Origin: Cyanophora paradoxa CCMP329
Taxonomy: Eukaryota; Plantae; Glaucophyta
Reading direction: 5' to 3'
Length of the DNA: 64,000 nucleotides
Assembly: GCA_004431415.1 (NCBI GenBank)
Contig: QPMI01000559.1
Coordinates: 72,961 to 136,960 of the forward strand
Of this stretch, positions 2,112 to 53,298 are shown piece by piece; within the stretch, counting starts at the first letter, position 1; every line of letters starts with the position of its first letter. The translations under genes and the position numbers were made by a program. Under the pieces are notes generated by a model. That model was given only the letters and a program-made list of their open reading frames with translations. It was not told the origin of the DNA and did no database searches.

Positions 2112-2972
2112 TACGGGCGCGCCGGACCTCCTACCTACAGCGCTTTAACTGTACCCGTGCTGTTTGGGTGAGAGCGTAACCCGCAGGGACTGGTGCCCTG
2201 ATGGAAAAGGGGATGGGAGCCGAGCCTAGCTACGAGCTGAGCAGGCGCTTCGCGTCCACGCCCGTGCCGTAGCGGATGAAGATGCCCCTGCGAGAGGTCT
2301 GTGCGATTCCGATCGTAATCGCAACTCTGATTCCGACCGTAATCGCAACTCTGATTCCGATCGTAATCGCAACTCTGATTCCGATCGTAATCGCAACTCT
2401 GATTCCGATCGCAATCGCAACTCTGATTCCGATCGTAATCGCAAGTGTATTTGTTTGGATATGTGTTGTGGTTTTCGAATTAAGCCCCCCTGTTCGAACT
2501 CAAATCTTGGGGCAGAAAAGTTTTACGACGATTGATTGTATTCGAAAACTCTACTCTTGCACAGTTTTTGTTGCAGAATTGAATTCATGCCCAAATGCTA
2601 TACTTCAATTATACAAGTGTGACTGGACAGGGGGGGGGGGGGGGGTAAACGGAGATGTTTCGTTGCGGTGAAATGACATGCATCGTAATCGCACTGTGTA
2701 TAACTCCTAGTAGTTATTGTTGTGTGCTAATGCAAATCGTGGCCGACGTAGAATTGCATGCGCATTATATATAATTAGCCTTGAGGGGTCTGACGTCTTG
2801 ATTGCGATTACGATTGAGCCTTGAGGGGTCTGACGTCTTTGATTGTGATTGCGATTGCGGCCCCTGCCGCCACAAGACGCGATGCAGCACCACGCCGCGC
2901 ATGCGGGCACACGTAGCCATAGGTAGCCAGAGTGTCCGCGGGGAGGCGCATATGCATTACTCTCCTTAGGGG
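2112..2972 (-). mobile_element. Degenerate non-autonomous Fanzor-family element (right end 2112-2306, subterminal repeats, left-end internal fragment ~2855-2972)
   Basis: Reverse-complement match to ~53087-53284; 24-bp tandem (GATCGTAATCGCAACTCTGATTCC) at ~2310-2445; 2855-2972 matches the left-end family at 28190-28312. Extreme termini are diverged or lost. Confidence 0.75.
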
Positions 2973-3253
2973 GACATGCAGGATATCCGGGCCTTCAGGG
3001 CCTTCGGCTTTTTGTCTAATACTTCCATACATGCTGTACATACTGTTCATTCTGCGCCTCGTGAAGGAAAGCACACCGAACTTATAGATCTTAAGGTGGT
3101 GGCAGCCTTTGACTCAGATCTAGAGCTCGTGGCGGAATGTATGTGCAGCGACTGCGCCACAGCATATTATTGTGCATTTGCGCTTCACACAGATCAGACA
3201 TCATCTGCTACATGTAAAAAAAACCATACAAGATATTGGATGCGCAGCTATAG

Positions 3254-4835
3254 CTAGACTCCATGGGACCGAAGAAAACGGCTGAGCTGTTCGTTCACTA
3301 GAAGAGTTATCTGCGTGAAAAACATTCAGGTGAGTTCTTTTCAACAGAAAACGAGGAGATGAAGCTAGCGCCTGCCTCCACCCTCTTCCATAAGACTGGG
3401 CCGCCCCCCCCTTCCCCCCGCCCCCCCCCGCCCCCCCCCCCCCCCCTTGCCCCCCGTCATACTCAACTCCCCGTCTCTCAACCCCACCTCCCCCCCCCCC
3501 CCCCCCCCCCCCCCAACAACATCAACAATCATCACCATCACATGTGGCGCAATTCGAACATAGTAGGTCCCGAACCCCTGTGCGCACAGGCCTTAGTAAT
3601 GCAAAGCAGTCTATAGCTTTTAAAGGACAAACACGACAAAGTACTTGGCACCTTGTAGAACGCTAGAGGGCCCTCGTTTACGAGCGTTTTGAATACACAG
3701 TCGACTGAGTTTTTGTAGGGAAGCAATCCATGTGCATCCGGTTTTTGTTTCTGCATGCGCGTCTGCCAACCAAAGTCAGGATGCTCCAGCTCGGATTTCG
3801 ATTTTGGAGGATGGGAGGATGGGAACCTTCACAAAATCGAAGGGAAGAGAGGCCGCTGACGCGAGAAAACCCGCGGCTGCGCTCGCTGGTAGCTCCGCTT
3901 CTTTTCTCGTCCATTCCAACCGATGTTGTAGCACATCCTTGACCCGTTCATTTGATGCTAACATTGCGGCATTGAGCGCCATTGCTCGGCAGACCGTGGG
4001 GGTGCACCCCTAAGAGAGGTAAGGGCAGGCGGACGTCGGAGATACGGCGTTTCGCGCCTTCCAAAGGGCGAAGAAGCCCTCCTCTTTGATGATGCGGCCA
4101 AGCGCGTTGCCGACACCCGTGTAATTGCGGCGCTGCTCCTTGGGAAGCGTGGAGTCTGACTAAAAGAGAGTAAGGAAAAGGAAGATCAACTGAAAGAGAG
4201 CAGACCTGCATGCGAATGAGGGCGAGGTCTGCGGGAGTGCCAAAAACCGAGGCGATGCCGCCGGCCGATAGACCGAGGGTTGCCAAAACGTATGTTGGTA
4301 TGTGCTGGGCTGGAAAGTATTCTTCTTGGACTTTGTCGCGAGCGCTGTTGAACAGCCCAAGGCGAGCGGTTGTGTACGTCGCCTGCCGGAGAAGGGCAGC
4401 GCCGAGGCCCCGGTAAAAAGAGAGCATGCCGTCCTCGCGAAGCACTGTGAGGACTGTGGCAACAGCCCCCGCTTTGGGGCCCTTTACGCCTTCGCCTGGG
4501 AGATTTTCACTCGACGTAAGATTTCGATTTCGATGTTTGCACTCAAAGTAAGAAGCCTTACCTGCGAGCTGAAGCCTGACCTTGACCAAATCGACCGGCT
4601 GGAAAGAGGTCAGCGACGAGCACACGAGCGACGAGCGCGCGAGGCCAGGCTGTCCACCTGTATTATGCATGTTGCGAACATGCCGCTTGAACCGCCTAAG
4701 ACCTGCGCGGTGAAGAGCAGGCCGCTCACGGACGGACGCCGAAGGCTGGGGCGGCTCGGCGCGTACATAGGGTCGTGCCGCCTTCCAGACAGCGAGGGCA
4801 TTTGGGTACGCCGACGCCTCGAACTCCCGTGTCAT
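3254..4835 (-). CDS. Mitochondrial 2-oxoglutarate/malate (di/tricarboxylate) carrier, SLC25 family, multi-exon
   Basis: Exons with carrier signatures QPVDLVKVRLQL, YRGLGAALLRQATYTTARLG, GTPADLALIRMQ, LPFDFVK, YKNSVDCVFKTLVNEGPLAFYK, GFGTYYVRIAPH; last exon ITLLVNEQLSRFLRSHGV*. Confidence 0.93.
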
Positions 4836-7003: not shown

Positions 7004-7249
7004 TCCATCAGGGCATCAGTCCCTGCGGGTTACGCTCTCACCCAAACAGCACGGGTACAGTTAAAGCGCTGTAGGTAGGAGGTCCCGCGCGCCCGTAGCT
7101 TAGAAAGAGCAATCCGTTGTGGCAAATTCTCCATCAGGGCACCAGTCCCTGCGGGTTACGCTCTCACCCAAACAGCACGGGTACAGTTAAAGCGCTGTAG
7201 GTAGGAGGTCCCGCGCGCCCGTAGCTTAGAAAGAGCAATCCGTTGTGGC
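7004..7249 (+). ncRNA. Two tandem copies of the Fanzor right end / putative omegaRNA scaffold (7004-7111 and 7130-7237), each followed by ATCCGTTGTGGC
   Basis: Near-identical to 53191-53298; 126-bp periodicity. Confidence 0.7.
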
Positions 7250-7353
7250 TTGAGCCACGAAGCTTGCAATTGACGGGCTCTGCCTTGAGCTTAGAAAGAG
7301 CTGGCCTGGGGAGGGATTGCGCCGAACTTTTGGCCGCAGGCCACCAACTTTTT

Positions 7354-7998: not shown

Positions 7999-8066
7999 CG
8001 GGGTTCGTGCATTCGATCGCGAAACGTGACTATGATAACCTTCAATGAGTAGGCTACTGGAAAGGA

Positions 8067-12610
<4,544 letters not shown>

Positions 12611-12689
12611 TACAACAGCATTTTAATTTGAGCTCGGCCCCCTGGGCTCTGCGCATGCCTGAAGGGGTCGGCAGTGTGATGCGCATCGC

Positions 12690-14819: not shown

Positions 14820-15615
14820 ATGGCGTCAAAAGAACCGACCACCTCGGGGACGATCTTCAAGAAGTGCGTTCCTCTGCTTGCGCCCGGCACGCAGCGCGTG
14901 GGCTAACGCGTAGATGCAGGTTTGGGAAAGACGAAATCTCCACGCAGAACCTGGTGAAGTCCTCTGTGCAGCGGGGCATACGCAGCTCCATTCTGGCGCA
15001 AATGCCTGCGATCGAGCCGATCATAGATGACATCCTGCCGAAGAAGAGCGACCTTGTCATCGCAAAATGGTGCGGAGGCGCGCAGGACCGCTCGATATTC
15101 CGAAATCATGGACACGCCTCGGCAGTGAAGGCCACATCAGTCTCGTCTGCATCGACAAAGAGCCCCTTTTCTTCCAGGAGCGCGATGGTCCATTCTTCCC
15201 AACGCTGCGTCTCTTGCACAAATGTGAGCGTCATTTTTTGCAGGTTGAACGTCGATTTGATTGACAGCCATCTCTGCAGATCCCTTCATCCTGCCACACA
15301 TGCAGTGCGACAAGGGGGCGATCAAGTTTGTCATTGGCGGGGCGAACGTGATGTGCCCTGGGCTGACCTCGAAGGGGGCCAAGATGGCTGAAGTCCCGGG
15401 GAACTCGGCTGTCGCCGTGATGGCGGAGGGCAAGCAGCATGCGATGGCAGTTGGTCTGACACGTTGGTCCTCTGAAGAAATGTGCGGTTCTTTTTTGAGA
15501 TTTCCCCCCCATGCAAGAATGATTCCAGAGCAGACGAAAGACGAACAAGGATATTGGAGTGTTCAACATGCATTACCTGGGTGATGGGTTGTGGAAGAAC
15601 CCTCGCTTGGATTAG
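14820..15615 (+). CDS. MCTS1: MCT-1/Tma20 PUA-domain translation re-initiation factor, multi-exon
   Basis: Spliced product IFKK|[22 protein letters not shown]...[11 protein letters not shown]|[31 protein letters not shown]...GKQHAMAVG...HYLGDGLW. Confidence 0.95.
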
Positions 15616-15865
15616 TACTTCAACTTCCCGGACTCCCGGGCCCCGGGGCCGGCTCGAGCCAAGCCTAGCCAGCCCGAAAATCGGCTCCGAGGCTCGAGCC
15701 GCTAGCAAGCAGGCTTGCCTCGCGATCGAGTCCTCGACTGCCTGCTCGAGCCGAGGCTCCCCCACAAGCCCCTGACTCCCTGTCCCTGTAATCTATATTA
15801 CAGATGATGACTTCTCTGACGCTGCTTCCGATTCTAGCTATAGTCTATGGATGCACTACTCGACT

Positions 15866-16105
15866 TGCTCTTTCTACGCTACGGGCGCGCGGGACCACTC
15901 CTAGACCGTCAACGCTTTAACTATACCCGTGCTGTTCGGGGTGAGAGCGTAACCCGCAGGGACTGGTGCCCTGATGGAAAAAAGGGGATGGGAGCCGAGC
16001 CTAGCTACGTATACGAGCTGAGCAGGCGCTTCGCGTCCACGCCCGTGCCGTAGCGGATCAGGATGCCCCTGCGAGAGGTCTGTGCGATCAGTACGATTAC
16101 GATTG
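15866..16105 (-). mobile_element. Fanzor right end copy (variant subfamily, includes the last coding exon)
   Basis: Reverse complement of ~53065-53298, with the variant central segment shared with 43865-44104. Confidence 0.85.
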
Positions 16106-17084
16106 TGAATCGTAATCACAACCCTGATTGCGATCGTAATCGCAACTCTAGATCTAATTCTGATCGTAATCGCAACTCTAATTCTGCTTTTTCTCTATAT
16201 CGCTTCAAATTGAAGAATTAAGAAATTATTGAGGCATTTACGGAGAACAGTGGTTTCGGGCTTTGGCTCCCCTTTCTCAATAGGACTGATCGCTTGCTGA
16301 AGCCATTATGGCCCCCTCCTGCTGACCCGTTCTTTGCCATCTTCGAAGCCTGGCGGACTATTTTCGATGTCAGAAGGCCTCCCGGAGAGTCCTCCCACAC
16401 TGGGTTCTCCGGGTCGGCGGGTGGCGAACTGAGTGGCTCAGTTCGGGACAAAGCACCTCCCCACTGACACTGTAGCTAGCTACAGGCCCGCACAGCAGGT
16501 GCGTTTTCCCTTGGAGCTGATCGTAATCGTAATTCTCTGGGTCTCGTCTTTGATTTTTTTTTCGTTTCTTGTTTTGATGAGCTCGGGCTGGGCAGCTGCT
16601 CGAGGATCAGCAGCTTGCCAGACCGCGTCATCGTCAGAAAATGGGAGCTGTTCGGCGAAGAAATCAACTGTAGCGAACGGGCGCTATGAGTGCAACGAAA
16701 GAGCCATGGCAAATCGAAAGTGTAGCACCGTCCTCGCCCTCCCAGCGCCGCCCGATCGCAATCGTAATCGTACTGATCGGCGGCGCCGAACCCTTCATCG
16801 CCCTGACACGAATCTCAGTCGCGCGCGACTCGACTTGCTCGGGAGCTGCTCGAGGCTGCACTGCAGCTGCAGGGTGGGCGGGTGGGCGGGTTCGGGCGTG
16901 TATGTTTATCAGGGTGGAAGAGGGGGGGGGGGGGGGGGAAGATTTAGGGTAGGGGATGGGTTGCTCAGGGGTTTTTTTCACCCACGCCAGCGTTCAGCCG
17001 CGCCAGCGCTGCCGGTAGCGTTATCGGCATCGCAATCGCTAGCACTTGCACGCAGTGACGCGGCAGTACTGTATTGCTTTTTCA

Positions 17085-17663
17085 ATTTGATCCGCCAAGA
17101 GGTGCCGCTGACGAGTGAGACGGCGCCCACAAATAGTAGGAATCAGGATGTCTAAACGCGCACTTGACTGGGCTTTTCGGTGCGCCGCGCTCGTTTTGAC
17201 GCCGACCCCGTTCCGCGCGTGCTCATGACGTCGTCCGTGTCGTCGGTAGCGCGACGACGACGGGTGCGCTTCCATCCATTCTCGGCCACGCGCAATGTAC
17301 CAAACACCCGCGCAGTGCTCTTCGGTGTGACGGTTGTCGGCCTGTTCCAGTTCGGTGCGCTGGCGCCCCCCGCAGAGCGCGCCCCCGATTCTGACCTTGG
17401 ACCGCAGCTGGCGTTTCGTACTCAATTTTGACGAAAGAAAGACCTGCCGTGCCGCCCGCCGGAGCCTCGGAATCTGCAGCCCCGCAGGCATGCGCCGGAG
17501 CCGCAAGCAGATCTTTGGCGCTTCCGCTGACGCTCTCTCAGAAGTAAACCGTGCCATCGCGGACGCGCCACTCTCCATGCGTCACCGCACCCGTAGCCTA
17601 GAAAGAGCAGCCGAAGAACGTGCACTCAAAGCTGTCCCTGAGGGGAAGCCTGGGCTTGCTTGA
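17085..17663 (+). CDS. Small multi-exon protein, possibly NDUFA13/GRIM-19-like (complex I B16.6)
   Basis: IRQEVPLT..FHPFSATRNVP, a hydrophobic segment VLFGVTVVGLFQFG, then WRFVLNFDERK and EERALKAVPEGKPG* loosely resemble the B16.6 layout; start unresolved. Confidence 0.35.
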
Positions 17664-17774
17664 GGCCTGAGTTCACGTAAAGTCTACGTCCGGGCTTAAC
17701 TTCGTCGTAGGCAAATCGAAATCGTCCTGCATGGTTGGCATAAAGTGCGGCGGGTTTTTAGGCCTTGGTTGGAC

Positions 17775-18792
17775 GCATTTGGACACGTACTGAAACGCAG
17801 GTCCGGGCTACAAGTGTGGGAATGTACACTGCGGCCGCCGCGGCCGCGGGCCCAGCCCACCGAGCCCACGCTCGGCCAGCCGGGCCCTGCGTGGCCCCCT
17901 AAGGAGAGTAATGCGCCTCCCCACGGACACTCTGGCTAGCTAGAGCTGGACGTCTTTGATTTCGGTTGCGATTGGGGGTTGGGCGATGGAGCTCAGGTTG
18001 GACGTCATTGATTTCGGATACGATTAGGGGTTGTTTTACAAATTAAATAGGGATTGGGTGACCGAGCGAAGGTTGGACGTCTTTGATTGCATGCGATTAC
18101 GATTAGGCCGGGTTGGGCGACGGAGCTAATTTTATAAGCTTTTAAGGTTAACGTTAACGTTGGATGTCTTTGATTTCGATAACGATAAGGGGTTGGGCGA
18201 CACAGCGCTAGCTATGGTACCGGTTGTACGTTGGAAGCCATCATAGTATATATATATATATTATTGCCTCACGGCTTTATGCCGTCAAGAGCCCGCACTC
18301 CGAGTCGCGTTACTCGCATGCGCAGTGCTTGGCCTTAGTCTACGCAGCGCTCGCATTGAGTGCGGCGATTGGACCCCCACTACTTTTCATGTACCCCTCT
18401 CGGGCTCACACCCCAGGTGACACACTTGTACCCTGCGACTGTGCTTGCTCCTAGAATACCAGTTCCGCTCGCTCTCGCTGCCAGCCTGCCGAAGCTGCAC
18501 AGCACGCATGGTCACGCCTAGCAGCACCGTAAACTAGGCTCTTCTGAATATATATAGCATATAGCGCCAGCTAGCGCTAGCTAGAGTGTCCGCGGGAAGG
18601 CGAATTAATCGAAATACTCTCCTTAGGGGGCCGGGGGGGGGGGGGGGGGGGGGCATGACCAGCTTGCTGGCCATGGTGGGCTGGGCGCCAGCCGGGCCAG
18701 CGGCTGCGGCGGCCGGAGTGTACATTCCCACACTTGCAATATTAATTGTTGCATGTCGCCCAGACTTGCGGTTTGAATTCGTGTCCAAATGC
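17775..18792. mobile_element. Inverted pair of left ends (17775-17940 plus; 18578-18792 minus) enclosing ~50-bp subterminal repeats
   Basis: GCA-TTTGGACAC termini at both outer edges; repeated GGACGTCTTTGATT...CGATT units at ~17945-18200. Confidence 0.7.
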
Positions 18793-18925: not shown

Positions 18926-19080
18926 TGCTCTTTCTAAGCTACGGGCGCGCCGGACCTCCTACCTACAGCGCTTTAACTGTACCCGTGCTGTTCGGGGTGA
19001 GAGCGTAACCCGCAGGGACTGGTGCCCTGATGGAGAAAAGGGGATGGGAGCCGAGCCTAGCTACGAGCTGAGCAGGCGCT
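18926..19080 (-). mobile_element. Fanzor right end copy
   Basis: Reverse complement of ~53145-53298 with intact GAAAGAGCA terminus. Confidence 0.85.
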
Positions 19081-19148
19081 AAAATTTTACTCTCCAAAGT
19101 TTCACTCATCTTCGATAGAGAAGGAACTCAACGATAGATAGAGAGGGA

Positions 19149-20492: not shown

Positions 20493-20539
20493 CAGCACGT
20501 AGGTAGGAGGTCCGGCGCGCCCGTAGCTTAGAAAGAGCA
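20493..20539 (+). mobile_element. Minimal Fanzor right end copy
   Basis: GTAGGTAGGAGGTCCGGCGCGCCCGTAGCTTAGAAAGAGCA, identical to the element terminus. Confidence 0.8.
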
Positions 20540-22156: not shown

Positions 22157-22520
22157 TGGAGCCTGAGCAGAGTGCCCCTAGGCCTCTATTAATATTCGTC
22201 CCCTTCTTGCCCTCTGGCGCAGGCCGACTCCATGTCTGGTCGCCTCCTCGCTGCAGGCGTACCACGTTGCGAAGAGGACCGAGGCCTGCGCCCACAGCGC
22301 GCAGAAGTGCGTCAACAGGCATCGCCCCCCCCCCCCCCCCCCCCCCTCCCCCCCCCCCATTGCCGGGGCAGCTAGCAAGAGTGTCCGCGGGGAGGCGCAT
22401 TACTCTCCTTGGCCAGTTCTTTGTTCAAGAATAGAGCAATAGCGGCTCACCCAAACAGCACGGGTACAGCTAAAGCGCTGAGGTAGGAGGTCCGGCCGCG
22501 CCCGTAGCTTAGAAAGAGCA
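22157..22520 (+). mobile_element. Composite ~365-bp unit ending in a Fanzor right end; second copy inverted at 32301-32665
   Basis: Colinear similarity between the two copies, stopping exactly at GAAAGAGCA. Confidence 0.8.
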
Positions 22521-32300: not shown

Positions 32301-32665
32301 TGCTCTTTCTAAGCTACGGGCGCGGCCGGACCTCCTACCTCAGCGCTTTAACTGTACCCGTGCTGTTTGGGTGAGCCGCTATTGCTCTATTCTTGAACAA
32401 AGAACTGGCCAAGGAGAGTAATGCGCCTCCCCGCGGACACTCTTGCTAGCTGCCCCGGCGAGGGGGGGGGGGGGGGGGGGGGGGGCGATGCCTGTTGACG
32501 CACTTCTGCGCGCTGTGGGCGCACGCCTCGGTCCTCTTCGCAACGTGGTACGCCTGCAGCGAGGCGGCCAGACATGTACATGGAGTCAGCCTGCGCCATG
32601 CCAGAGGGCAAGCTTAAGGGGGGGACGAATAGAGACCTAGGCCTAGGGGCACTCTGCTCAGGCTC
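32301..32665 (-). mobile_element. Second copy of the composite right-end unit
   Basis: Reverse complement of 22157-22520. Confidence 0.8.
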
Positions 32666-36996: not shown

Positions 36997-38977
36997 TTAC
37001 GCATCGTCGAGGGCCGCAACGCCGGGGAGGACCTTGCCCTCCAGCAGCTCGAGCGAGGCACCACCACCAGTGGAGATGTGCGACATCTTCTCCGCGAGAC
37101 CAGCCTTCTCGACGGCAGCAACCGAGTCACCGCCACCGATGATAGTCTTGCAGCCCTTGGGAGTGAGCTCGGCAAGGAGGTCGGCAATGGCGAAGGTGCC
37201 CTTCGCGAACTGCGCGGCGATTTCAACGCGGGTGCTTACGGCAGCTCGAAGAGATGCGCCATCTGGGTTGGACAAACCTTGTCAAACTCGAACACGCCCA
37301 TGGGGCCGTTCCAGATGACGGTCTTGGCGTCAGACAGAGCCTTCGAGAACGACTCGATCGACTTGGGGCCAATGTCCAGACCCATCCAGCCATCGGGGAT
37401 CTTGTCGGCATCAACGACCTGATAACGGACTGAGCAATCCGATCCGGACGAGGAACTACAGACACCCGTGCCTGCGTGTTGGCCTCGGGGTCGAACTTGT
37501 CGGCCAGGAGGACGTCCGTGGGCAGGAGGATTTCGACGCCCTTCGCCTTCGCGACCTCCTCGAGCTTCTTGGCGAGCTCAACCTTGTCCTCCTCAACGAG
37601 GGACGAGCCAGTAGGAAGGCCGCGGGCCTTGTAGAAAGTGAAGACCATGCCTGCATCACGGTAAGCCTACGATACCATAGATCGTAAACAGAAGCAAGTT
37701 TGAAGGAAGACGCACCACCGCCGATGATGAGCTTGTCGCACTTGTTCAGCAGCGACTCGATCACACCGATCTTCGAGGACACCTTCGAGCCACCGACGAT
37801 GGCGACGAGGGGGCGGACGGGCTCATCGACGGCGCCCCTAACGGAATCGGTTAGCTCCTGTGTTAGCTAGCTTTGTCGATCAGGGGTGCTCACGCAAGGT
37901 ACTCGAGCTCCTTCTCGAGGAGGAAGCCAGCGACGGAGGGCTTCAGGTACGCGGTCACGCCAGCGGTAGAGCCGTGAGCACTGCACGTGCGATGCTCGGC
38001 GCAAGCGAAAACACAGGCGAAAGACACGGCACCGCACCGGTGGGCAGTGCCGAAGGCGTCGTTGACGTAGAGGTCAGCGTTCGCGGCGAGCTTCTTGGCG
38101 AACTCGGCGTCGTTCTTCTCCTCCTCCGGGTAGAAGCGGACGTTCTCAAGGAGAATGACATCGCCCTGCAGAGCGGTCAAACCGGACCGCCAAGCCGAGC
38201 CCAGGAAAATCACCTCAGACATGGCCGCGACGGCGGACTCCACCTCCGCGCCGATGCAGTCGTTGGTCTTCTTCACCGGCTTGCCGAGGAGCTCCGAGAG
38301 GCGCGCCGCGACTGCGCCCCGCCACGACCGGTCAGCGCGCGCGCTGGAGCGCGCGATTCCGGATCTTCTAAAACGTTCTTTAGCTGTGATTTAGGCGTTC
38401 GGAAGGCGATCGGGGGCGCCCAGCCGGCCATCGATCGGCGCGCGCAATGTGCGTGCGAGTGCGCGCGATTGTGCGCGGCGGGCGTCGGACGAGGGGGGGG
38501 TGCGGATCCCGACGAACCCGGGGTGAGGCGGAACTTGTCCTCCGGGCCGCTCTTCGGGCGGCCGAGGTGGGACGTGACGAGGACCTTCGCGCCCTTCGAG
38601 GCGAGGTACTGGATGGTCGGCACGGCGGCGCGGATGCGGGTGTCGTCGGTGATCTTCATCTCCTTGTCGAGCGGGACGTTGAGGTCGCAGCGGATGAACA
38701 CGCGCTTGCCCTTGAGGTCGGCCTCAGTGAGGTTCTTGACCGACTTCTTAGCCAGCTTCGCCGACATGCGGATGGCCTTCGGGACAGCGAAAGACTTCTT
38801 CGCGGCCGCGAAACGGTTCTGCGCCGAGAAGGTGCGCGCGGCATCGAACTTCTTGGTCGCCGCGAAGCTCTTCGGGATGGCCGGGGCCGCCGAGGGCTTG
38901 GCAGAGCAAACCGACGACGACGCCTGAACGGCGGGCGCAGCGCGGACGCCAACGGCGGCGAACGAGGCGGCGAACAT
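36997..38977 (-). CDS. PGK: Phosphoglycerate kinase, plastid-targeted, multi-exon
   Basis: MFAASF... transit peptide; [65 protein letters not shown]. Confidence 0.98.
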
Positions 38978-39933
38978 GTTGAAGGCTGCGATGAACGAAC
39001 TATGGGAACAATCCTGGGCAGGGTACCGGATACAGACAAATCGTTCAAGTCGCTCTGACTGGGACCATGCTCAGACGTCATCAACAAGCCCGTCCCGATG
39101 CTTCGAATTCCGGTCCATATGCATAAGCATCCGGCGCCGGCCATGCATATGTAGCCGGTGATGCTCGCATGCTCAATATCGATATCGATATATCGATCGA
39201 TATCGCGAGCTCGAGCACAGCTGCATGCGGGGGGGCCTCCGGAAGGCGCTCTATTATCCGGCTTGGGCGTGTCTTATACATACTGTTCTTCTTCTTCTAT
39301 ATATATATATATAATCTAAACCTCTCTGTACACGCTAGGGTACAACCCGCCGTGTCGCCGGCACAGCGGGTTGGGTCGGGGGTTCGCCAGTCCGAGAGCA
39401 AGCCTGGTGGAGCCGCCGGGCTCAGAGCATCGGGGAGATCTATAGCTGTGTGGTCGGGGAGGAGAGAGACGGGGGGTACAGCACGGGAGGGCGTGGGGCC
39501 GTGGGAAGGGGCGGGGGAGGACCGTCGCCTTAAAAGCTTGGCTTTGTCTTCGATTCGGTGTCAATGATCGGGTCGCGCGAGCTCGAGGGTGCACGTTGCA
39601 ATTCAATGCAATTGCGCATGCAATTGGGGTGGCCATGGAGCGTGCACGCATTGTAATTACGTATACTCCCCTGGTCGTAAGCTTATAATTAAGCTTACGT
39701 GCTCGTGTACGTATACGGGCCTCGCGATCGGCCCGGCGCCGTGGCTGCGCGGGGGGAACTCGGAATTCGAACGGCGCGGGCCAGCCCCTTGCGGGCACGC
39801 GGGCCACGTTAATGTTAATTATAATTATAATCATAAGGTTTTACTTAGTAACGGCGAGCCTCGAGCTCGGAGATCGAGGGCCGCGCGCGCGGGCCACGTT
39901 AATGTTAATTTCACGGACCTCCGGGCCTTCCTA

Positions 39934-40130
39934 TGCTCTTTCTAAGCTACGGGCGCGGCCGGACCTCCTACTTCAGCGCTTTAACTGTACCCGTGCTGTT
40001 TGGGTGAGAGCGTAACCCGCAGGCCCTGAGGGACTGGTGCCCTAGGCCTGATCATCGGATGGAAAAAAGGGAATCGGAGCCTAGCTAGCTACGAGCTGAG
40101 CAGGCGCTTCGCGTCCACGCCCGTGCCGTA
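39934..40130 (-). mobile_element. Fanzor right end copy with small insertions
   Basis: Intact terminus TGCTCTTTCTAAGCTACGGGCGCG on the plus strand. Confidence 0.85.
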
Positions 40131-40639
40131 TAGACACAGGCGCTTCGCGTATAGACACAGGCGCTTCGCGTATAGACACAACACGCACCGCGCGGCGCCG
40201 CCGTCGCATATGCATTTATGAACGGAACAGGGACACTGCAGTTGCACTGCCCCTGTACATGTTGGAGGGGAAGGACCTCTATCGGTTGATCATGAGCAGG
40301 AAAGGTCAGGTTAGCCAAGATAGAGATAGCTATAGTGCTGACTCTGTAGATCTATAGCTAGAGCCTGCGCACGCAGCCGCTGATAATGATCATGAGTTGC
40401 GCGAACGCCTGCAGTTGGGACGGTCGGCCGGGCTCGCGATCGACTCGGCGAGCTCGTGGGACCGGAAGAGGACTTGCAGGTCAATCAGTTAGGTTGATTA
40501 GTTCTGGGTCTTCGACTCGCCCCCGCCCCCTGCTCGTCACGGCGTCTCGCGATCGGGATGTGCAAGGTGGCCATGTGGCCTAATTCAACAAAGACAGCAT
40601 CTGCAGACTGCAGCTAATGCTCGGTAGGCGTAGACGTGC

Positions 40640-41235
40640 CTCCTGCCGCGCCTCCGCCCCGCCCGGCGAGCCCCGCCGCCGCCCGCCGCGCCTCCGCCCC
40701 GCCCGGCGAGCCCCGCCGCCGCCCGCCGCGTCTCCGCCCCGCCCGACGAGCCGCGCCGCCGCCCGCCGCGGCTCCGCCCCGCCCGGCGCGCCGCTCCGCC
40801 GCCCGCTGCGCCTCCGCCCCGCCCGGTGCGCCGCGCCGCCGCCCGCCGCGCCTCCGGCCGCCCGGCGAGCCCCGCCGCCGCCCGCCGCGCCTCCACGCCG
40901 CGCCGCCGCCCGCTGCGCCCCGCCCGGCGGCGAGCCGCGCCGCCACCCGCCCGTCGAGCTGCACCGCCGCCCGCCGCGCCTCCGCCCGCCCGACGAGCCG
41001 CTCCGCCGCCAGCCGCGCCTCCGCCCCGCCGGCGCGCCGCGCCGCCGCCCGCCGCGCCTCCGCCCCGCCCGGCGAGCCGCGCCGCCGCCCGCTGCGCCCC
41101 GCCCGGCGGCGAGCCGCGCCGCCACCCGCCCGTCGAGCCGCGCCGCCGCCCGCCGCGCCTCCGCCCCGCCCGGCGAGCCGCGCCGCCACCCGCCGCGCCT
41201 CCGCCCCGCCCGGCGAGCCGCTCCGCCGCCCGCCG
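40640..41235. repeat. Extremely GC-rich minisatellite
   Basis: Recurrent CCGCCGCGCCTCCGCCCCGCCCGGCGAGCC units; long overlapping stop-free ORFs on both strands. Confidence 0.9.
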
Positions 41236-42243
41236 TCTGCTGCGGAGCGCGGCACACATCGAATCTAGTTGTGTGCACCTTGCGGCCGAGAAGAAGAAGG
41301 AGATGCGCAAGAGGAGCTGTTCGACGACATGGCGAGATCTGCACTTGAGCGCGCCTTCTTCTGTGTATGTGGCTTCTGTGCGCGCCCGGCGCGGGAGTGT
41401 CAATCGCGGGGCAGTCAGAACCGTCGGCGCGAACTCGGCCAGAGCAGCGCGCACCGGAACTCGGCGTCGCGGGCGCCTTCTTCCTGCACTCTCGCACGTG
41501 CTCATACAGGTTGTCGTGCCGAGTGAAGTGCTTCACTGCAGTCGCAAGGCAGCTCGGCCCCGCGACCTCGTCCACCTCTGCGCGCCGGCGCCATGCATGA
41601 GAACGAAGTTTGGCGGGGGAGGGGGGAGGGGCGAAGTTTGGGTACTGCAACACGATCGCGATAGGCGCCAAACTCTCATGATCAGGAGCACTTTTTTCCC
41701 GCGCCCGGCCCGGCGGTACAACAGGTACTTTAAGCGGCCTAGCGGGCCCGGCCACCCTGTGCCACACTGCCACGGTGCACCTCCGGTCTCGGCATGTATG
41801 ACATGAATCGTCGGGCTCATCACGCGCGTTTAGGCGCCGGTGCACTTGGTCCGGTAGATATACCGGACCGGTACCGCCACATGCATATGGCCCATATGCC
41901 TGGTACCCGGTGAGGCGCTAGATTGCATTTTTCGAAAATGTGTTATTAATATTAATATTGCAATTGCCGATTCCTGCAGCTGGCCATGGTCCACCCGACG
42001 TCGACAAGACCCGGCTCTACCGGTACCGGAACACGTTTTCGGACTCCTAGGGACATGCCTTGCAATTGCTAGGATCCGGCGAGAAATCCCGGGTTTTGGA
42101 AGGTTTCATTTTGGCCTGGGGTGGGCACCCGGACACCCCCAAGTGGGGGAAGGGGATCGAAGGACCTTCCCCAATAACGCAATTTCATACCCCCCTCCCC
42201 CTCCCACCCTCGGAGTGGCCGGTTCAGAAAGGCGCATTCAAGC

Positions 42244-42907
42244 ATGCTGTCGTTCACAGCTTCCGTCGCGCTCCCCGGCCAGCAGCGAGTGATCTCATTC
42301 ACCGGCGCCACCCGGTCACGCGCGCTGTGTCCACTGCCAGCCGTGCGGAAGGCGCGAACGCAGACGAGGCGTTTCGAAGCAGCGTCGGCCAAGCTGCGCA
42401 CGATCGAATCGAATGAGGATTGGAATGAGGCGCTGGAAGCATCCAAGGGCGGTCTGGTCGTTGCCATGTTTTCCGTGCGCCGCAAGTCATCGCTTGGCGC
42501 CCCGATCTTGGCCGCTAACGAAGCGCCCAGGCCAAGACCTGCGGACCATGCATAATGATTCAGCCAAAGATTGTCGAGTTCGCCGAGAAATTCAACGACG
42601 TCGTTTTCGTGCAGATCAAGGGCGACACGAATGAAGACACAAAGTCATTACCCTAATAAATTACGATTACGATCCAGCCTAATTCAAGAGCAGGTCCATC
42701 TGCAAGGAGCAGAAAATCAAGATGGTGCCGACGTTCCGCTTCATGTTCAATGGCGAGGTGCGGCGAGATTTCTCTATTGAAAACAAGTGTTGAACTGTTT
42801 CTAAAAAACATCAGAAAATTGACCACTACTCTGGCGCCAAGGCTGACGAGATCCTCGAGCACATTGAGCGAAACAAAGCGAAGGCTGAAGAATTAGCTGC
42901 CATGTAA
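42244..42907 (+). CDS. Plastid-type thioredoxin (Trx-f/CDSP32-like) with TCGPC active site
   Basis: MLSF... transit peptide; LVVAMFS|AKTCGPCIMIQPKIVEFAEKFNDVVFVQIKGD...|SICKEQKIKMVPTFRFMFNGE|KIDHYSGAK. Confidence 0.9.
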
Positions 42908-43419
42908 TACAGTATCACAGTATCACAGTATGCCGGCCAGGGCTCTAGTCCCTCCAGCCCTGCCGCAAAGCCCCCTTGGTCGCCACAGCAGAGTCACCGT
43001 AGACGCACACGTCTTTCATATGTTCAGGCTCCGGGCCCAGAGATTCCTGATGTAGATACGAAAATTCCTGATGGCAGCCAAAGTGGTAATCGTAATTCCC
43101 TCACGGCCTTGCTGGCCATGGATCGTAATCGCAATTCACAGTATGCCAGGGATCGTAATTCACAGTATGCCAGTGGCAATATTAATCGTAATTGCCCCAC
43201 CCCCCCCCCCCCCCACCCCCGCGCCCCCCCTCTGGCTTGAATTGGTTCGCAACGCGCGCAAGTGCACGGAGCTCGAGGCATCCACGCATTTAATTTTGCA
43301 CTTTGTGTTAACAAAGGTTTCTTTTGGCCGGGCAACTTCTTTGGGTGTTTACGATTACGATCAAGCCTTACGAGTTACGATTACGATCAGCCAGACGAGA
43401 AAGCCGAAGCCTGCACCAG

Positions 43420-43449
43420 GGACCTGCGTTTTAGTACGTGTCCAAATGC
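43420..43449 (-). mobile_element. Left end terminus copy
   Basis: Reverse complement reads GCATTTGGACACGTACTAAAACGCAGGTCC. Confidence 0.75.
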
Positions 43450-43864
43450 GAAGAATTAGCTGCCTAATATCACGAAGGAATCATTTTTGAAAGCGCTCCC
43501 CTCCCCCCCCAGGCCCGCCCCCCCCTGGCTTGAATTGGGTTCAACGGTTGCAACGCAAGTGCATGAAGGCATCCATGGGCGTTCGTCCATGCCCCCCTGA
43601 CTCCAGCTTTAAATTAGGCATGCGCCCCGCCCAGCCCACCGATCTTGCACACGGCCAGCTAGTCTTGTAGCCTAGCTAGCGCTATATATTGTAGGCCCTG
43701 TACTACGGTATAAGTAATTGTCTATCGTAATCGTAATTTACCTCCGGCCCGGCTCACCGCCTACCCGCCTACTAGGGCTAGCCCCCTGATAGTAATCGTA
43801 ATTTTCCAGTTGACCAGGCCAGGGCTCCCCTCGCCTATAGCCCATCGTAATCGTAATGGGCGCG

Positions 43865-44104
43865 GCAATCGCAATCGTAATCGTACTGATCGCACAGACC
43901 TCTTGCAGGGGCATCCTGATCCGCTACGGCACGGGCGTGGACGCGAAGCGCCTGCTCAGCTCGTAGCTAGGCTCGGCTCCCATCCCCTTTTCCATCAGGG
44001 CACCAGTCCCTGCGGGTTACGCTCTCACCCCGAACAGCACGGGTATAGTTAAAGCGTTGACGGTCTAGTGAGTGGTCCGGCGCGCCCGTAGCTTAGAAAG
44101 AGCA
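43865..44104 (+). mobile_element. Fanzor right end copy including the last exon (variant subfamily)
   Basis: Matches ~53069-53298; encodes GILIRYGTGVDAKRLLSS*. Confidence 0.88.
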
Positions 44105-47199: not shown

Positions 47200-50100
47200 C
47201 ACAGCTCGCGAAAAAAAGTCGGTCCCCACAACTCGGTTTGTATGACAGGGGGGGGAGCAAGTCGACTTGGAAAATCCCTACGCCGGTCAATTAAATCTTT
47301 TCATATATATGGCATATATATGCATTCTTATAGAGCTTATTTCTTTCTATCAGTAGTTTTAACGAGATCGAGGAGAGATTCCGGTCGGCGGTCGCTGGCA
47401 GATCTAGAGAGAAGTTCAACAAACAGCACGCCTCTTGACAGTGTTGACACCAGCGCCCACATCAGCATTGCGTAGGCCCGAGGATCGAAGACAGCCAGGC
47501 AGTATAGTTTGGATGCGTCCGGGCGTACTGTGGCCTAGCGCGCCTTCGTTCTGCCGCAGCAGCGGCCGACGCACGACGCCCGCGCGCAGCGAGCACGACG
47601 CACTCATGATCCGCTACGGCTCGTGGTGCGCTCGTTGCCCCCGTTGCCCGGGCCCGTTGCCCCTGTCGCTGACAAACACGCAGGCTGACACTCCCGTAGT
47701 AGCCACTGCATGTACCTGTAGTAGCTACTGTACCTGTAGTAGCCACCATGCGGCTCTGCGGTCCGCGCGTCCGAGCCGGGGCCGACCGTCGGCCGCGGAC
47801 GCGTGGCGGCGTGTCTCGGTGCTCGAGCAGGGCGCGACAGACGCGGGCGACGACGGGGCGACGCGGGCGACGCGGGGCGGCGGGGCGGGCCCCGGCGGGC
47901 GGCGGAGGCCAGGCCGACGCGCGGCGGGTCTCGGTGCGCGAGCAGGGGCCGCGGGCGGCGCCGAGGGGCTGCCGACGACGGGGCGCAGGCCTGCGGCTTC
48001 GGGGGCGGCGGGGCGGGCCCTGGCGGGCGGCGTAGGCCAGGCCGACGCGCGGCGGCGGGTCTCGGTGCGCGAGCAGGGGCCGCGGGCGGCGCCGAGGGGC
48101 TGCCGACGACGGGGCGCAGGCCTGCGGCTTCGGGGGCGGCGGGGCGGGCCCCGGCGGGCGGCGTAGGCCAGGCCGACGCGCGGCGGCGGGTCTCGGTGCG
48201 CGAGCAGGGGCCGCGGGCGGCGCCGGGGCGCTGCGGACGACGGGGCGTAGGCCTGCGGCTTCGGGGGCGGCGGGGCGGGCCCTGGCGGGCGGCGTAGGCC
48301 AGGCCGACGCGCGGCGGCGGGTCTCGGTGCGCGAGCAGGGGCCGCGGGCGGCGCCGAGGGGCTGCCGACGACGGGGCGCAGGCCTGCGGCTTCGGGGGCG
48401 GCGGGGCGGGCCCTGGCGGGCGGCGTAGGCCAGGCCGACGCGCGGCGGCGGGTCTCGGTGCGCGAGCAGGGGCCGCGGGCGGCGCCGGGGCGCATTCTTC
48501 TCAGGGCCTCTCCGTCCCGCCTGCTCTCCTGCTCTCCGTCCCTCTCCGAAACCCGCCGGCGCCCCGCCTGCGCCGTCTGGGTCGGCGAGCGCTTTGTTAA
48601 GCATGTACGAAGCTGTAAATGCATCTAGATGATGTATATCTCGCGTCCCAGGCGCTAGATGCGACCGGGCGGGCGAGAATCGTCCTGGGGCCAGATGGGG
48701 CCGCAGATTGCAGCGGATCTTGAATGCAGGTCCAGGCTTTAATCGGCGGTCTTCGGTACCACCACCACCGTCTTCAGCACCCTCGAAAACCCCCGGGGGC
48801 GTGAAATCGCCACTACTGAGTGAGTCGATGCTTCCGAAGTTCAATAAGGCATCATGAGCAGGTCAGGGTGGCATCTTGAAACTTGAAAACTGAAAAGTTC
48901 CAGAGAGAGTCCTACGCCGTGACGAGTGAAGTTCAAAACATCGGTCCGGCCCAAAAACACTTCGGATCACCCTGGATCTTGGTGTGGTGACATTTATACA
49001 TGTGATAATGATTCTGGCTTGAAGAGCGGCCAGCTGAGGCCAGCCAGTCGCCCAGGAACTCACTAGCTCACTGACTGTGAGCAGGCGATCTCCGCTGAGG
49101 ATGCACCGACGGGGGCCGCGATGCATCAGCACACGCTCTATCAAGGCTCGCATCGATTTGCGTTAGCGGTGGCCAAGCGAACCCCCGCGGCCGGGAGCGA
49201 AATTAGATCGCAAAGGCCCCCCCCCCTCATGATCATGATCAAGCCTTCTGGAGGAGAAGGCGATTCCCGGTTCCCGCTGCAGATGCACGCGCCGGAGCCG
49301 CGCTCCACCCGCACATGCTCTTTCGAGATGTGCATCGATCTGCGTTAACGGTGGTCCAGCGACTCGGCGAACCCTCGCGGTCTAGAGCGAAATTAGATCG
49401 CGCAGGTGCCCCCACCCCAAGCCTTCTGAAGGAGCAGGCGATCTTCGCTGTGGATGCACCCCCGGGGACCGCGCTTCAACTGCACATGCTCTTTTGAGGT
49501 GTGCATCGATCTGCGTTAGCGGCGGCCCGGCGGCCCTCGCAGTAAGCAGCGAAATCAAATCTCCCAGGTGCCACCCGGCCCACCCACTGGACTCAGTGGA
49601 GCAGGTGCCTCTGGCCATGGCGGCGGGGGTGCGTGCCGCCGCCCGTACGCGAGCTCTGCGCGTGCTCTAGATGTGCCTCATGGCCCTAGACGTCTCAACC
49701 CGCATCGCCCCGCCGTTGCAGCCATGCCATCTGGAACCGCGGCCGCCTGCGTCTGCACACGAGGCCCGGGGCCGGGGCCGGGGCCTGCGGCGGCGAGGAC
49801 GCGGCGGAGGAGGCGGAAGAGGGCGGCGCGGCGGAGGGGGCGGGGCGCGACGGGCCGGCCCAGGGGGCCCGGGGCCGGGGCGGCGGAGCGGGGCCCGCTG
49901 GAGCCGAGGAGGACGGCCGGCGGGGCCGCCGGGAGCGCCGCCAGGTCCCCCGCCTGGCCCTGCGCCGCCGCGGGCTCGAGGGGGGGTATACCCCGAGCAC
50001 GGGCGGGTACGACAAACAGCGGTTCGCGCCCGAAGGATCCGACACAGCCAGCCGGCACCGTCGCCGTGAGGCTGGCATGCCGCTTAAGCTTGATTGCACA

Positions 50101-51229: not shown

Positions 51230-51482
51230 CGTGTAAGACTTAAATACCGCGTCACAAATTAGCGCGTTTCAAAAATTTGGGCCCCGATTTGCGCTTAATT
51301 TACCGCGCTACCAAATATTACCGCGTTCCATGCATCGTCTTCCGAAGTTCGAAAATGTATTATTTGTTAGCAAAGGGGGTAATACATATACTGCGCTACC
51401 AAATTACTGCGTTCTAAAACTTTTGAGCGCGGTAATTTGTCAGCGCGGTAGTTAAGTCAGCGCGGTATATAAGTCTTACACG
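51230..51482. mobile_element. ~253-bp MITE
   Basis: TIR CGTGTAAGACTTA(A/T)ATACCGCG (22 bp, one mismatch); internal TACCGCG repeats; AT-rich core. Confidence 0.8.
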
Positions 51483-51999
51483 CCGGTGCGTGCGCATGCA
51501 TATGCCATGATGTGCGCATGCATGCGCATGAGCAGCTGCGCATGCACTGCGCATGCAGATATCGATCTATCTGTACGTATGGCGATATCGATCGCGATCA
51601 GCTGCAGGCAGCCTGGCAGCACTGCATGCACATGTGGCACACTGTGACATGTACGTACATACGTATATGCACGCGTGCAATTAATAAATATTGCAAGTGC
51701 ACGTATGCATACACGCGTGTTAGGGACCTAGGCCTAGGTGCGCATACTACCCAGAAAGTTAATTGCACCACTCGGTTGGGATTTGTGTGTTGTAGCATGG
51801 CGGGGCGAGGGGGGCAGCGCGCTACGTATACGCGACAGCTGGCATGGCATGTGAGAGGCAGCATGTTGGAACATGGGGGCAAGGAGCATCAGCACCTCCG
51901 GTCCAGCCCTTTTCAACCTTTACATTTCCGTGGGAAGGATCGGACCTGCCACAACGACCTCTCGCCGCCGTCGGGGCGGATCTGCCTCCTACGTCATTC

Positions 52000-53298
52000 G
52001 CATTTGGACACGTACTGAAACGCAGGTCCGGGCTACAAGTGTGGGAATGAGCCGTAACGCACATGAGCCGTCTATGTAGTAATCACAGATCAAAGCTAAG
52101 ACGTCCTAATTATGATCGTAATCGCAGATCAAGGACGCCCTAATCGTAATCGCAGATCAAAGCTAAGACGTCGACGTCCTTATTATGATCGTAATTGCAG
52201 ATCAAAGCTAAGACGTCGACGTCTTCGCAACACCAGCATGTCGCTGGCCAACAGAATTCGCAACACCAGCTGGAATGCCATGCACAAGTTGGCCAAGGTA
52301 TGCGTAAGCTATCATTGGGTTGTTATCGTGTGGGGGAATCGACCTTGGTAGCTGCTTCTTCGAAACAAGCCGTTGAAAGATGCCGCGCAACAATGTACTC
52401 AACCCCACCAGGAACTTGCACAAGGGCTTCCAGGAGGGCAGCTTCTTCCTTCCGAGAAGTTCCTGTGCCAAGGAAGGAGCAATGCCATGGCAGGGGTTTG
52501 AGCAGAAAAACATTTAAGCAGGTCTTCCAACGTGTTGGCATCATCACTTGCTCGTCTCACAGCTGAAAACGCTGCTGGAACCTGTAAATCTCGAAGTGAG
52601 AAGGCTTCAGGTATTCTTGAAGGGAAAAAAACGGACCGTGGGTGGCGCGTCAGGCTCTCGACTGCCGCCACTACGAGTACGCTGGTCTTGCGTTTCGACC
52701 CCCTCTGCCACACGGTCTTGATGCTTATTTTGCGCAGGTTCCGGCAGCTCCTGCAGCACGCCGTCCGGCGGCACCCCAAGGACGAGGACCCGCCGTGCAC
52801 GCTCCAGCTCGTCTGCGAGGCCTGGACCTCGAAGACGTGCGGGGTGTGCGGCAAGATCAACTACGGGCTCGGCTCGAAGAGGGTCTTCGAGTGCCGCCCC
52901 GGGTGCGGCTTCCGGGCGGACCGCGACGGCAGCGCCGCGCGGTGCGTGTTGTGTCTATACACGCCTATACACAATCGCTGCCCCCCCCCCCGCCTAGTCC
53001 CGACACGGCCTAGCCACGGCGTAATTTTCCGTCTAGGGCCGGCTCGCCCTCCCAGCGCCGCCCGATTCGCAATCGTAATCGTACTGATCGCACAGACCTC
53101 TCGCAGGGGCATCCTGATCCGCTACGGCACGGGCGTGGACGCGAAGCGCCTGCTCAGCTCGTAGCTAGGCTCGGCTCCCATCCCCTTTTTTCCATCAGGG
53201 CACCAGTCCCTGCGGGTTACGCTCTCACCCAAACAGCACGGGTACAGTTAAAGCGCTGTAGGTAGGAGGTCCGGCGCGCCCGTAGCTTAGAAAGAGCA
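52000..53298 (+). mobile_element. Internally deleted Fanzor2/IS607-like element with left end, subterminal repeats, nuclease remnant and right end
   Basis: GCA-TTTGGACACGTACTGAAACGC at 52000; GATCGTAATCGCAGATCAA repeats at ~52080-52215; RuvC/zinc-finger exons; terminus AGAAAGAGCA at 53298. Confidence 0.8.
52211..53164 (+). pseudogene. Fanzor (eukaryotic TnpB homologue) C-terminal remnant with spliceosomal introns
   Basis: RRRRLRNTSMSLANRIRNTSWNAMHKLAK; spliced (introns 52677-52737 and 52942-53106) VARQALDCRHYEFRQLL...VCEAWTSKTCGVCG...LGSKRVFECRPGCGFRADRDGSAARGILIRY...*; RuvC-I and the N-terminus are absent. Confidence 0.9.

What the first reader, a model, noticed from the sequence alone, without database searches (positions are those of the whole stretch)
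2112..53298. Eleven dispersed omegaRNA-scaffold copies with different guide-position flanks: a candidate distributed guide library
Seen: the Fanzor right end recurs at 2112(-), 7004(+), 7130(+), 15866(-), 18926(-), 20493(+), 22446(+), 32301(-), 39934(-), 43865(+) and at the element itself (ending 53298). Ten copies end precisely at AGAAAGAGCA and then diverge. Flanks: ATCCGTTGTGGC (twice), AGTCGAGTAGTGCATC, TCATTGGTTTGGACAG, GCAATCTAGACCCCCG, ATAGTATGTTACACGT, CACAGCCTGGCCATGG, TAGGAAGGCCCGGAGG, TCCACGTGTGCTTCAA, CACATAGAGTTCTTAC. That is roughly one copy per 5 kb, all intergenic. Established: TnpB/Fanzor guides are read from DNA just beyond the right end. Inference: nuclease-free copies could supply many different guides in trans to a few active Fanzors, analogous to a scattered CRISPR array.
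Basis: partly seen in the sequence, partly recalled or inferred. Interest (0 to 1): 0.92.

Follow-up and report, generated by a model that had tools for sequence, protein, structure and literature searches.

The report
Truncated Fanzor transposon ends, Cyanophora subtelomere
Eleven broken-off tail ends of a jumping gene for an RNA-guided DNA-cutting enzyme (Fanzor2) lie near a chromosome end of the alga Cyanophora paradoxa; they are real, but their different neighbours are just different landing sites in host DNA, and nothing shows that they act as a library of guides.

Summary
The eleven copies are real; ten end exactly at GAGCA. They are 5'-truncated DNA copies (41-663 nt) of a Fanzor2 element of Cyanophora paradoxa. 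Several keep intron and last exon, and the 'element itself' encodes only residues 988-1087 of a 1087-aa family member. Only 7 keep both halves of a predicted guide-adjacent pseudoknot (6 flanks); 5 keep the whole post-stop end. There is no covariation, and the scaffold is no more conserved than the intron. Flanks are host DNA before or after genes. RNA contigs cross one junction only antisense, in the MCT-1 3' UTR; small RNAs could not be tested. Useful extras: GCA-preceded flank duplications of 2-12 nt at 4-6 copies, and low-copy host pieces shared upstream of different copies. Both point to one-ended, right-end-anchored copying, as described for Chlamydomonas CRe-1/2/3, possibly by repair of Fanzor cuts. 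Gene-less omegaRNA copies acting in trans are already published (ghost loci, PATEs). The scan found the same thing before on other DNA of this genome (s1-515310, s1-546206). Verdict: new member of a known kind; the library reading is unsupported.

The parts
52636..53298 (+). Longest copy: 5'-truncated Fanzor2 gene tail (end of one exon from 52636, intron, exon to about 52943, intron to 53106, last exon 53107-53164 with stop) plus 134-nt right end
   Evidence: encodes residues 988-1087 of P0015
53165..53298 (+). Post-stop right end, putative omegaRNA scaffold: hairpin 53214-53230 whose loop GCTCT (53221-53225) can pair with AGAGC (53293-53297); core stem 53238-53242 with 53279-53283; possible closing stem 53165-53171 with 53284-53290
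   Evidence: prediction only, folding z-scores not significant
2103..2307 (-). Copy with intron end and last exon, 3' terminus damaged (no GAGCA); preceded by a 24-nt tandem array 2305-2444; points at the 3' end of a histone H1 gene (stop 1817)
7004..7111 (+). 108-nt copy, first unit of a tandem pair
7127..7237 (+). 111-nt copy between two GAGCA+12-nt duplications (7107-7123 and 7233-7249), 3-nt filler; upstream of a CRM-domain gene (ATG 7413)
15866..16112 (-). 247-nt copy (subfamily 2) with intron end and last exon; antisense in the 3' UTR of an MCT-1 (PUA) gene, stop 15615; candidate insert runs to a GAGCA+8-nt duplication at 16828-16840 and holds an inverted intron piece (16733-16779)
18926..19080 (-). 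155-nt copy starting inside the last exon; mosaic of subfamily variants; no duplication found
20499..20539 (+). 41-nt copy without the pseudoknot hairpin; GCA+3-nt duplication (20492-20497, 20537-20542)
22446..22520 (+). 75-nt copy lacking the pseudoknot loop; AGAGCA+4-nt duplication (22433-22442, 22515-22524); shares about 290 nt upstream with the 32301 copy
32301..32375 (-). 75-nt copy lacking the pseudoknot loop; points at the 3' end of a RING-finger-like gene (stop 31966)
39934..40207 (-). Rearranged copy: exon/intron piece, internal deletion with 21-nt repeats, insertions of 14 and 8 nt in the right end; GCA+2-nt duplication; about 1 kb upstream of PGK
43860..44104 (+). 245-nt copy (subfamily 2) with intron end and last exon; points at the 3' end of a PP2C-like gene (stop 44211); weak GCA+6-nt duplication at 43278-43286
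17586..17609 (+). 24-nt mini end (22 of 24 identical), inside a spliced host transcript
53676..53695 (-). 20-nt mini end (18 of 20 identical), unrelated upstream DNA

Best explanation
Non-autonomous, 5'-truncated relics of a multi-copy Fanzor2-carrying DNA transposon. Copying is anchored at the right end, at a GCA target, and stops or switches template at variable points. That leaves a fixed 3' end, ragged 5' ends, retained introns, filler DNA and often a short duplication of the flank that starts right after GCA. Each different flank is simply a different insertion site. Up to 5-7 copies may still fold into an omegaRNA and could load a Fanzor made elsewhere; the guide would then match only its own (empty or sister) site, the known self-maintenance role, not a foreign target. 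Shown: copy anatomy, truncation, introns, host flanks, statistical excess of duplications and of shared upstream pieces. Inferred: GCA as target/TAM, one-ended copying. Not shown: which enzyme moves it (no transposase found) and any omegaRNA expression. For the copying step my preferred route (about 45% within this explanation) is excision or self-cut, Fanzor break 15-21 nt past GCA, then abortive copy-back from a sister or ectopic donor and end-joining; one-ended HUH/Helitron copying is about equally open.
For: 5' ends on the reference at 52636, 52923, 53055, 53063, 53087, 53145, 53188, 53191, 53224 (twice), 53258, plus 24- and 20-nt ends. Introns retained, so DNA template. No intact gene in the window; many tail-only gene models in EukProt Cyanophora. 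GCA+flank duplications: 12, 4, 3, 2 nt within 20 nt of the junction, 8 and 6 nt within 1 kb; summed length 52 against 25 for random flanks, P about 0.0005, 0.003 without the tandem pair; rule chosen after seeing the data. An RNA contig from another locus joins the end to a second repeat family right after that family's GCA. Four of ten low-copy dispersed duplicate pairs lie, both partners, within 1 kb upstream of two different copies in matching orientation (null mean 0.14, P<0.001, post hoc). The 75-nt end without the pseudoknot loop occurs at two sites with different flanks, so a full scaffold is not needed for spread. The same signature (5' truncation, intact 3' end, variable duplication after a fixed motif, captured 5' DNA) is described for CRe-1/2/3 (PMC3627910). 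ApmFNuc cuts 15-21 nt into the target (PMC10530073).
Against: Half of the copies show no duplication. The 6-nt case lies in another repeat and may be chance. No empty allele was seen. The 116-nt shared piece is 100% identical while the two right ends behind it differ at about nine events, so one simple copying event does not explain it. The 14 predicted core pairs are invariant while the loops between them vary, which hints at selection on the fold, at least in source elements. No left end and no transposase were identified.
Confidence: 0.8

Rival explanations
1. Functional distributed guide library: solo ends are kept by selection to supply many guides in trans to a few Fanzors for defence or gene regulation.
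For: Seven copies keep both pseudoknot halves and the core pairs never vary. A full-length gene model with catalytic motifs exists. RNA assemblies hold several end-plus-other-flank contigs (loose ends at 18925-18926; strand and size unknown). Four copies face the 3' ends of host genes.
Against: Continuous truncation down to 20 nt; four of eleven lack half the pseudoknot; no covariation; divergence per 100 nt: intron 1.9, exon 1.3, pseudoknot hairpin 2.0, terminus 2.1, middle 6.0. Flanks are host DNA with no second site in the window; one 19-nt viral match in four scans, not extending, about what chance gives. Four other copies face promoters, so no clear orientation rule. The end itself finishes in GCA, so an expressed guide might cut its own locus (inference).
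Confidence: 0.05
2. One-ended rolling-circle copying by an HUH transposase (Helitron2-like) supplied in trans, with no role for Fanzor cutting; the ends are cis-elements only. This is a variant of the best explanation that differs in the copying step.
For: The Bao and Jurka model for CRe-1/2/3; capture of upstream DNA; scan notes report Helitrons in this genome (unchecked).
Against: The end is GAGCA, not CTRR; no robust subterminal hairpin and no asymmetric inverted repeat found; canonical HUH insertion gives no duplications (PMC10288648).
Confidence: 0.3
3. Retroposition: a LINE reverse transcriptase copies transcripts of the element by target-primed reverse transcription using GCA microhomology.
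For: 5' truncation, variable duplications, filler and one inverted 5' piece resemble LINE products; scan notes report active LINEs in this genome (unchecked).
Against: Introns are retained; no poly(A) tail; no 3' transduced guide; upstream host DNA is shared between copies.
Confidence: 0.07
4. Passive decay and subtelomeric ectopic recombination of once full-length insertions, with the right end surviving by chance or as a recombination anchor.
For: Window is subtelomeric (TTAGGG array from 56560); mosaic subfamily variants in the 18926 copy; template-switch scars in the 39934 copy.
Against: Deletions would not spare the same 3' base in ten of eleven copies nor create GCA-preceded duplications; copies are 85-100% identical, so young.
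Confidence: 0.1

Closest known systems
CRe-1, CRe-2, CRe-3 Fanzor1/Helitron2 elements of Chlamydomonas reinhardtii (Bao and Jurka 2013, PMC3627910; Jiang et al. 2023, PMC10530073)
   Same: Intron-containing algal Fanzor; 3'-overabundant, 5'-truncated copies with intact right end; variable duplications starting directly after a fixed target motif; captured DNA at the 5' side; many stand-alone right-end RNA copies (20 reported).
   Different: Here the nuclease is Fanzor2-like, the motif is GCA rather than TTTT, duplications seen are 2-12 nt rather than 7-19, and no Helitron ends or partner transposase were found.
Ghost Spu-1 loci of Spizellomyces punctatus (Saito et al. 2023, PMC10432273)
   Same: Many gene-less copies carrying the omegaRNA region with different flanks; the paper already proposes a guide repertoire acting in trans and shows that ghost scaffolds work.
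   Different: Ghosts are a uniform element of about 550 nt with both inverted-repeat ends; these copies have one end only, ragged lengths and no inverted repeats, and a third lack part of the predicted core.
PATEs and gene-less IS200/IS605 elements; cut-and-copy retention by TnpB (Meers et al., bioRxiv 10.1101/2023.03.14.532601)
   Same: Gene-less elements encoding omegaRNAs used in trans; the guide matches the element's own empty site.
   Different: Those are two-ended elements moved by Y1 TnpA without duplication, in bacteria.
IS607-type Fanzor2 (ApmFz2/ApmFNuc, PDB 9b0l; ISXfa1 in Yoon et al., bioRxiv 10.1101/2023.08.09.552727)
   Same: Rearranged RuvC (P.F.T motif, alternative glutamate, zinc finger, DRD); predicted loop-to-3'-end pseudoknot; target motif resembling the element end.
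   Different: The Cyanophora protein model is twice as long and intron-rich; no serine recombinase or GG core found; truncation with duplications is not an IS607 trait.
CRISPR array
   Same: A constant sequence followed by variable sequences.
   Different: No acquired spacers, no array, no acquisition machinery; the variable part is the insertion site.

Membership tests
Fanzor2 (TnpB-like) element | C-terminal RuvC with zinc finger and RD motif homologous to TnpB/Fanzor | tested here: met
   PF07282 E 5e-9; best PDB hit mimivirus Fanzor2 9b0l
Fanzor2 (TnpB-like) element | Rearranged RuvC-II (P in place of E, alternative E downstream) and RuvC-I D in a full-length member | tested here: met
   P0015: IDPG at 612, PEFRT at 971, EAWTSKTC at 1028, DRDG at 1062. 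It is a gene model from elsewhere in the genome; not met by any copy in the window
Fanzor2 (TnpB-like) element | Phylogenetic placement in Fanzor2 rather than Fanzor1 | tested here: inconclusive
   Only best-hit evidence; no tree built
omegaRNA | Scaffold at the right end with a guide-adjacent pseudoknot | tested here: inconclusive
   Compatible with the minimum-energy fold, but about 10% of controls pass; z-scores not significant; no covariation; no Rfam match
omegaRNA | Discrete transcript running 15-20 nt past the end, bound by the nuclease | not testable with these tools
   Only assembled contigs were available
Ghost Fanzor locus (Spu-1 type) | Both transposon ends present around a uniform gene-less body | tested here: not met
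   Ragged 5' ends, no shared left end, no inverted repeats
Ghost Fanzor locus (Spu-1 type) | Scaffold region retained without the gene | tested here: met
   7 of 11 keep both pseudoknot halves, 5 keep the whole post-stop end
Helitron / Helitron2 | CTRR 3' end with subterminal hairpin, or asymmetric inverted repeats and T-T insertion | tested here: not met
   End is GAGCA; target GCA; no strong hairpin
Helitron / Helitron2 | RepHel partner sharing the ends | not testable with these tools
IS607 | Serine recombinase TnpA and GG core, no duplication | tested here: not met
   No GG core at the end and duplications present; no recombinase recognised in the window or in the N-terminus of P0015, though the rest of the genome was not searched
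Non-LTR retroposed copy (SINE or processed copy) | Loss of introns and a poly(A) or simple-repeat tail | tested here: not met
   Introns retained, no tail
CRISPR-like guide library | Guides acquired from foreign DNA with matching targets elsewhere | tested here: not met
   Flanks are host DNA next to genes; no targets in the window; viral matches at chance level; host genome outside the window not searched

The most novel reading that the evidence does not exclude
The truncated copies are scars of Fanzor's own cutting. Because the element ends in the same GCA that it targets, an omegaRNA (also from a gene-less copy) directs a break into its own flank or empty site, and abortive copy-back with template switching re-creates and multiplies right ends with short duplications and captured host DNA, with little or no transposase input. 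The genome would then record in vivo Fanzor2 activity, its TAM and its cut distance, and would explain the open CRe-1/2/3 signature.
Probability: 0.25. Interest if true: 0.65.

Novelty: new member of a known kind. Interest (0 to 1): 0.27.

Why it matters
As it stands: a Fanzor2 family in a glaucophyte (no paper with both 'Cyanophora' and 'Fanzor' in the searched library) that shows the one-sided truncation and variable duplication so far described for Chlamydomonas Fanzor1 elements. That the signature recurs with a different nuclease clade and target motif suggests that it follows from Fanzor rather than from the Helitron, a point Craig 2023 (PMC10288648) raised as speculation. This gives a cheap genome-wide test of what Fanzors do in their own hosts and a predicted TAM (GCA-ending) for a new enzyme. 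The library idea would matter more, but it is already proposed in print and has no support here.

Tried and rejected
Exact search of the 23-nt end in viral and metagenome contigs: no hits. Four GCA+flank 19-mers in viral contigs: one hit, no extension, 42% GC contig unrelated to the window, rejected as chance. Rfam: nothing. Folding z-scores -0.3 to +1.3; RNAalifold covariation term unfavourable. Similarity among flanks: mean 4.05 of 16, as by chance, no base preference after GCA, so homing to look-alike sites is rejected. Mobilising domain in the N-terminus of P0015: no homologues, Atlas hits under 0.9. DNA around EukProt gene models: not on record. Empty alleles in two DNA runs over 15300-19400: none seen. 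Rule that ends dock behind stop codons: four copies fit, four face promoters, two unclear, so not established here. The stretch 52202-52600 as upstream Fanzor exons: no Pfam or tblastn support. The match ACGCTCTC upstream of the 17609 mini end as a diverged scaffold: rejected, it is the 3' end of a host intron. Read depth as copy number: over 100-fold single copy, but the tool states that it is no copy number.
Full report
Observation. Two mini ends of 24 and 20 nt and a 14-nt fragment were missed. The window ends in a TTAGGG array from 56560. Protein homologues are EukProt models of Cyanophora paradoxa, and one organism holds the stretch in public runs.

What the copies are. They are not uniform scaffolds. 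Their 5' ends fall at eleven different points over 660 nt; several keep the last intron and last exon, so the template was DNA. The 'element itself' starts abruptly at 52636 and encodes only residues 988-1087 of P0015, a 1087-aa model from elsewhere in the genome that has RuvC-I, the rearranged RuvC-II, the zinc finger and RuvC-III motifs and whose best solved relative is mimivirus Fanzor2. No intact Fanzor lies in the window. A second, 50% identical Fanzor family exists in this genome (P0018, P0019). Summed contig depth over the end is more than 100 times single-copy depth, which shows a high-copy family but is no copy number.

Scaffold. The 134 nt after the stop codon can form a hairpin (53214-53230) whose loop pairs with the bases just before the boundary, the architecture that Yoon et al. 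found necessary in an IS607 TnpB. It is compatible with the minimum-energy fold, but about 10% of shuffled or random sequences also pass, and folding z-scores are not significant. Seven copies keep both halves (six distinct flanks), five keep the whole post-stop end; three lack the loop and one lacks the 3' half. Fourteen core pairs never vary, so there is no covariation. Differences per 100 aligned nt are 1.9 in the intron, 1.3 in the exon, 2.0 in the pseudoknot hairpin, 2.1 in the last 20 nt and 4.0-6.0 in the rest.

Flanks. They resemble each other no more than chance and have no second site in the window. Four scans of viral contigs gave one non-extending 19-nt match, about what chance gives. 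They are host DNA: four copies point back at the 3' ends of histone H1, MCT-1, a RING-like and a PP2C-like gene (107-335 nt past the stop), four lie in front of same-strand genes (CRM-domain, PGK, two unnamed) (the RING and PP2C names rest on motifs read by eye). In two probable RNA runs a spliced plus-strand MCT-1 transcript runs into the 15866 copy, that is antisense to a guide RNA; the 18926 junction has only a depth-4 contig; other loci give RNA contigs with the end and long flanks, strand unknown. Contigs cannot show small RNAs, so expression of omegaRNAs is untested.

How the copies arose. The first bases of the 3' flank recur at the 5' side directly after GCA: 12 nt (7237 copy), 4, 3 and 2 nt within 20 nt of the junction, 8 and 6 nt within 1 kb. 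The excess over random flanks is significant (P 0.0005; 0.003 without the tandem pair), though the rule was chosen after seeing the data. A contig from another locus joins the end to a second repeat family right after that family's GCA. Four of ten low-copy dispersed duplicate pairs lie with both partners within 1 kb upstream of two different copies in matching orientation (null 0.14); two of these pieces have about two-copy depth. So duplicated DNA stops exactly at the right end and extends variably to the left with template switches. Bao and Jurka described the same pattern for CRe-1/2/3 in Chlamydomonas and called it one-ended transposition; Craig speculated that Fanzor cutting causes the duplications. 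My inference: after excision, or at a filled site if GAGCA itself serves as TAM, Fanzor cuts 15-21 nt into the flank (the distance measured for ApmFNuc); the distal end copies flank and right end from a donor, aborts, and is joined to the proximal end, which keeps GCA plus a few flank bases. This accounts for the fixed end, ragged starts, introns, filler and duplications. It is not shown: no empty allele, left end or transposase was found, half the copies lack a duplication, and the 100%-identical 116-nt piece sits behind two ends that differ at about nine events.

Comparison. Gene-less omegaRNA copies and the idea that they give a guide repertoire in trans are published for Spizellomyces ghost loci, Chlamydomonas and bacterial PATEs. 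These copies work like CRe-1/2/3 relics; they fail the membership tests for Spu-type ghosts (one end only), canonical Helitrons, IS607 and retroposed copies. No paper in the library names Fanzor in Cyanophora. Scan notes report the same tails and the same verdict on other pieces of this genome; these are unchecked AI notes and not independent evidence.

Verdict. Observation largely right, interpretation as a library unsupported (about 5%). New member of a known kind; interest 0.27. The residual interest is the insertion signature, which may record Fanzor2 cutting in its own host (25%; interest 0.65 if true).

Noticed in passing
window 17586-17609 (+), within 17053-17787: A 24-nt near-perfect right end lies in the last exon of a small spliced, transcribed host gene (one GC-AG intron) and reads in frame in what looks like its coding sequence; insertion and exaptation, or origin, unresolved.
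   Followed up: partly
window 16533-16745/19760-19972; 19168-19283/42944-43059; 32811-32930/43603-43714; 22159-22445/32376-32665: Low-copy host pieces shared upstream of different right-end copies; the 116-nt pair is 100% identical and one partner sits in a thioredoxin 3' UTR.
   Followed up: partly
window 53299-54501: Directly after the longest copy: a 311-nt direct repeat (53348-53658, 54192-54501) with a 48-nt triple repeat, enclosing about 500 nt that end in a 20-nt mini end on the minus strand whose GAGCA forms a perfect hairpin with its flank.
   Followed up: partly
window 17774-17950, 18567-18793, 24828-25182, 28068-28313, 2853-2982, 43420-43452, 51999-52049: A second high-copy short repeat family with a sharp boundary at one side (many RNA and DNA loose ends at 17774); also the core of the tandem array below.
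   Followed up: no
window 8057-12611: Array of about 710-nt units with GT microsatellites and G/C runs, containing the second repeat family.
   Followed up: no
window 2305-2444, 16102-16199, 52079-52217, 2777-2857: Tandem 24-nt and related repeats built on GATCGTAATCGCA, directly 5' of two copies and also found in the Fanzor intron.
   Followed up: no
window 56560-64000: TTAGGG telomere array of at least 7.4 kb; the window is a chromosome end.
   Followed up: no
window 40618-41275 and 47874-48487: GC-rich tandem arrays with 40-nt and 131-nt periods.
   Followed up: no
P0008, P0017, P0018 (EukProt models, not in window): Gene models in which the Fanzor tail is spliced onto host genes (FERRY3-like, AATF) and an 1839-aa model ending in a complete second-family Fanzor; the first two may be prediction artefacts of inserted tails.
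   Followed up: no
window 7288-7301 (+): A 14-nt fragment of the terminus 50 nt downstream of the tandem pair; the pair is also flanked by an 11-nt inverted repeat.
   Followed up: no
window 752-1817, 14930-15615, 36997-38995, 42567-42908: Host genes recognised: histone H1, MCT-1 (PUA), phosphoglycerate kinase, thioredoxin; also mitochondrial carrier (about 4.1 kb, minus) and CRM-domain (7.4 kb, plus).
   Followed up: partly
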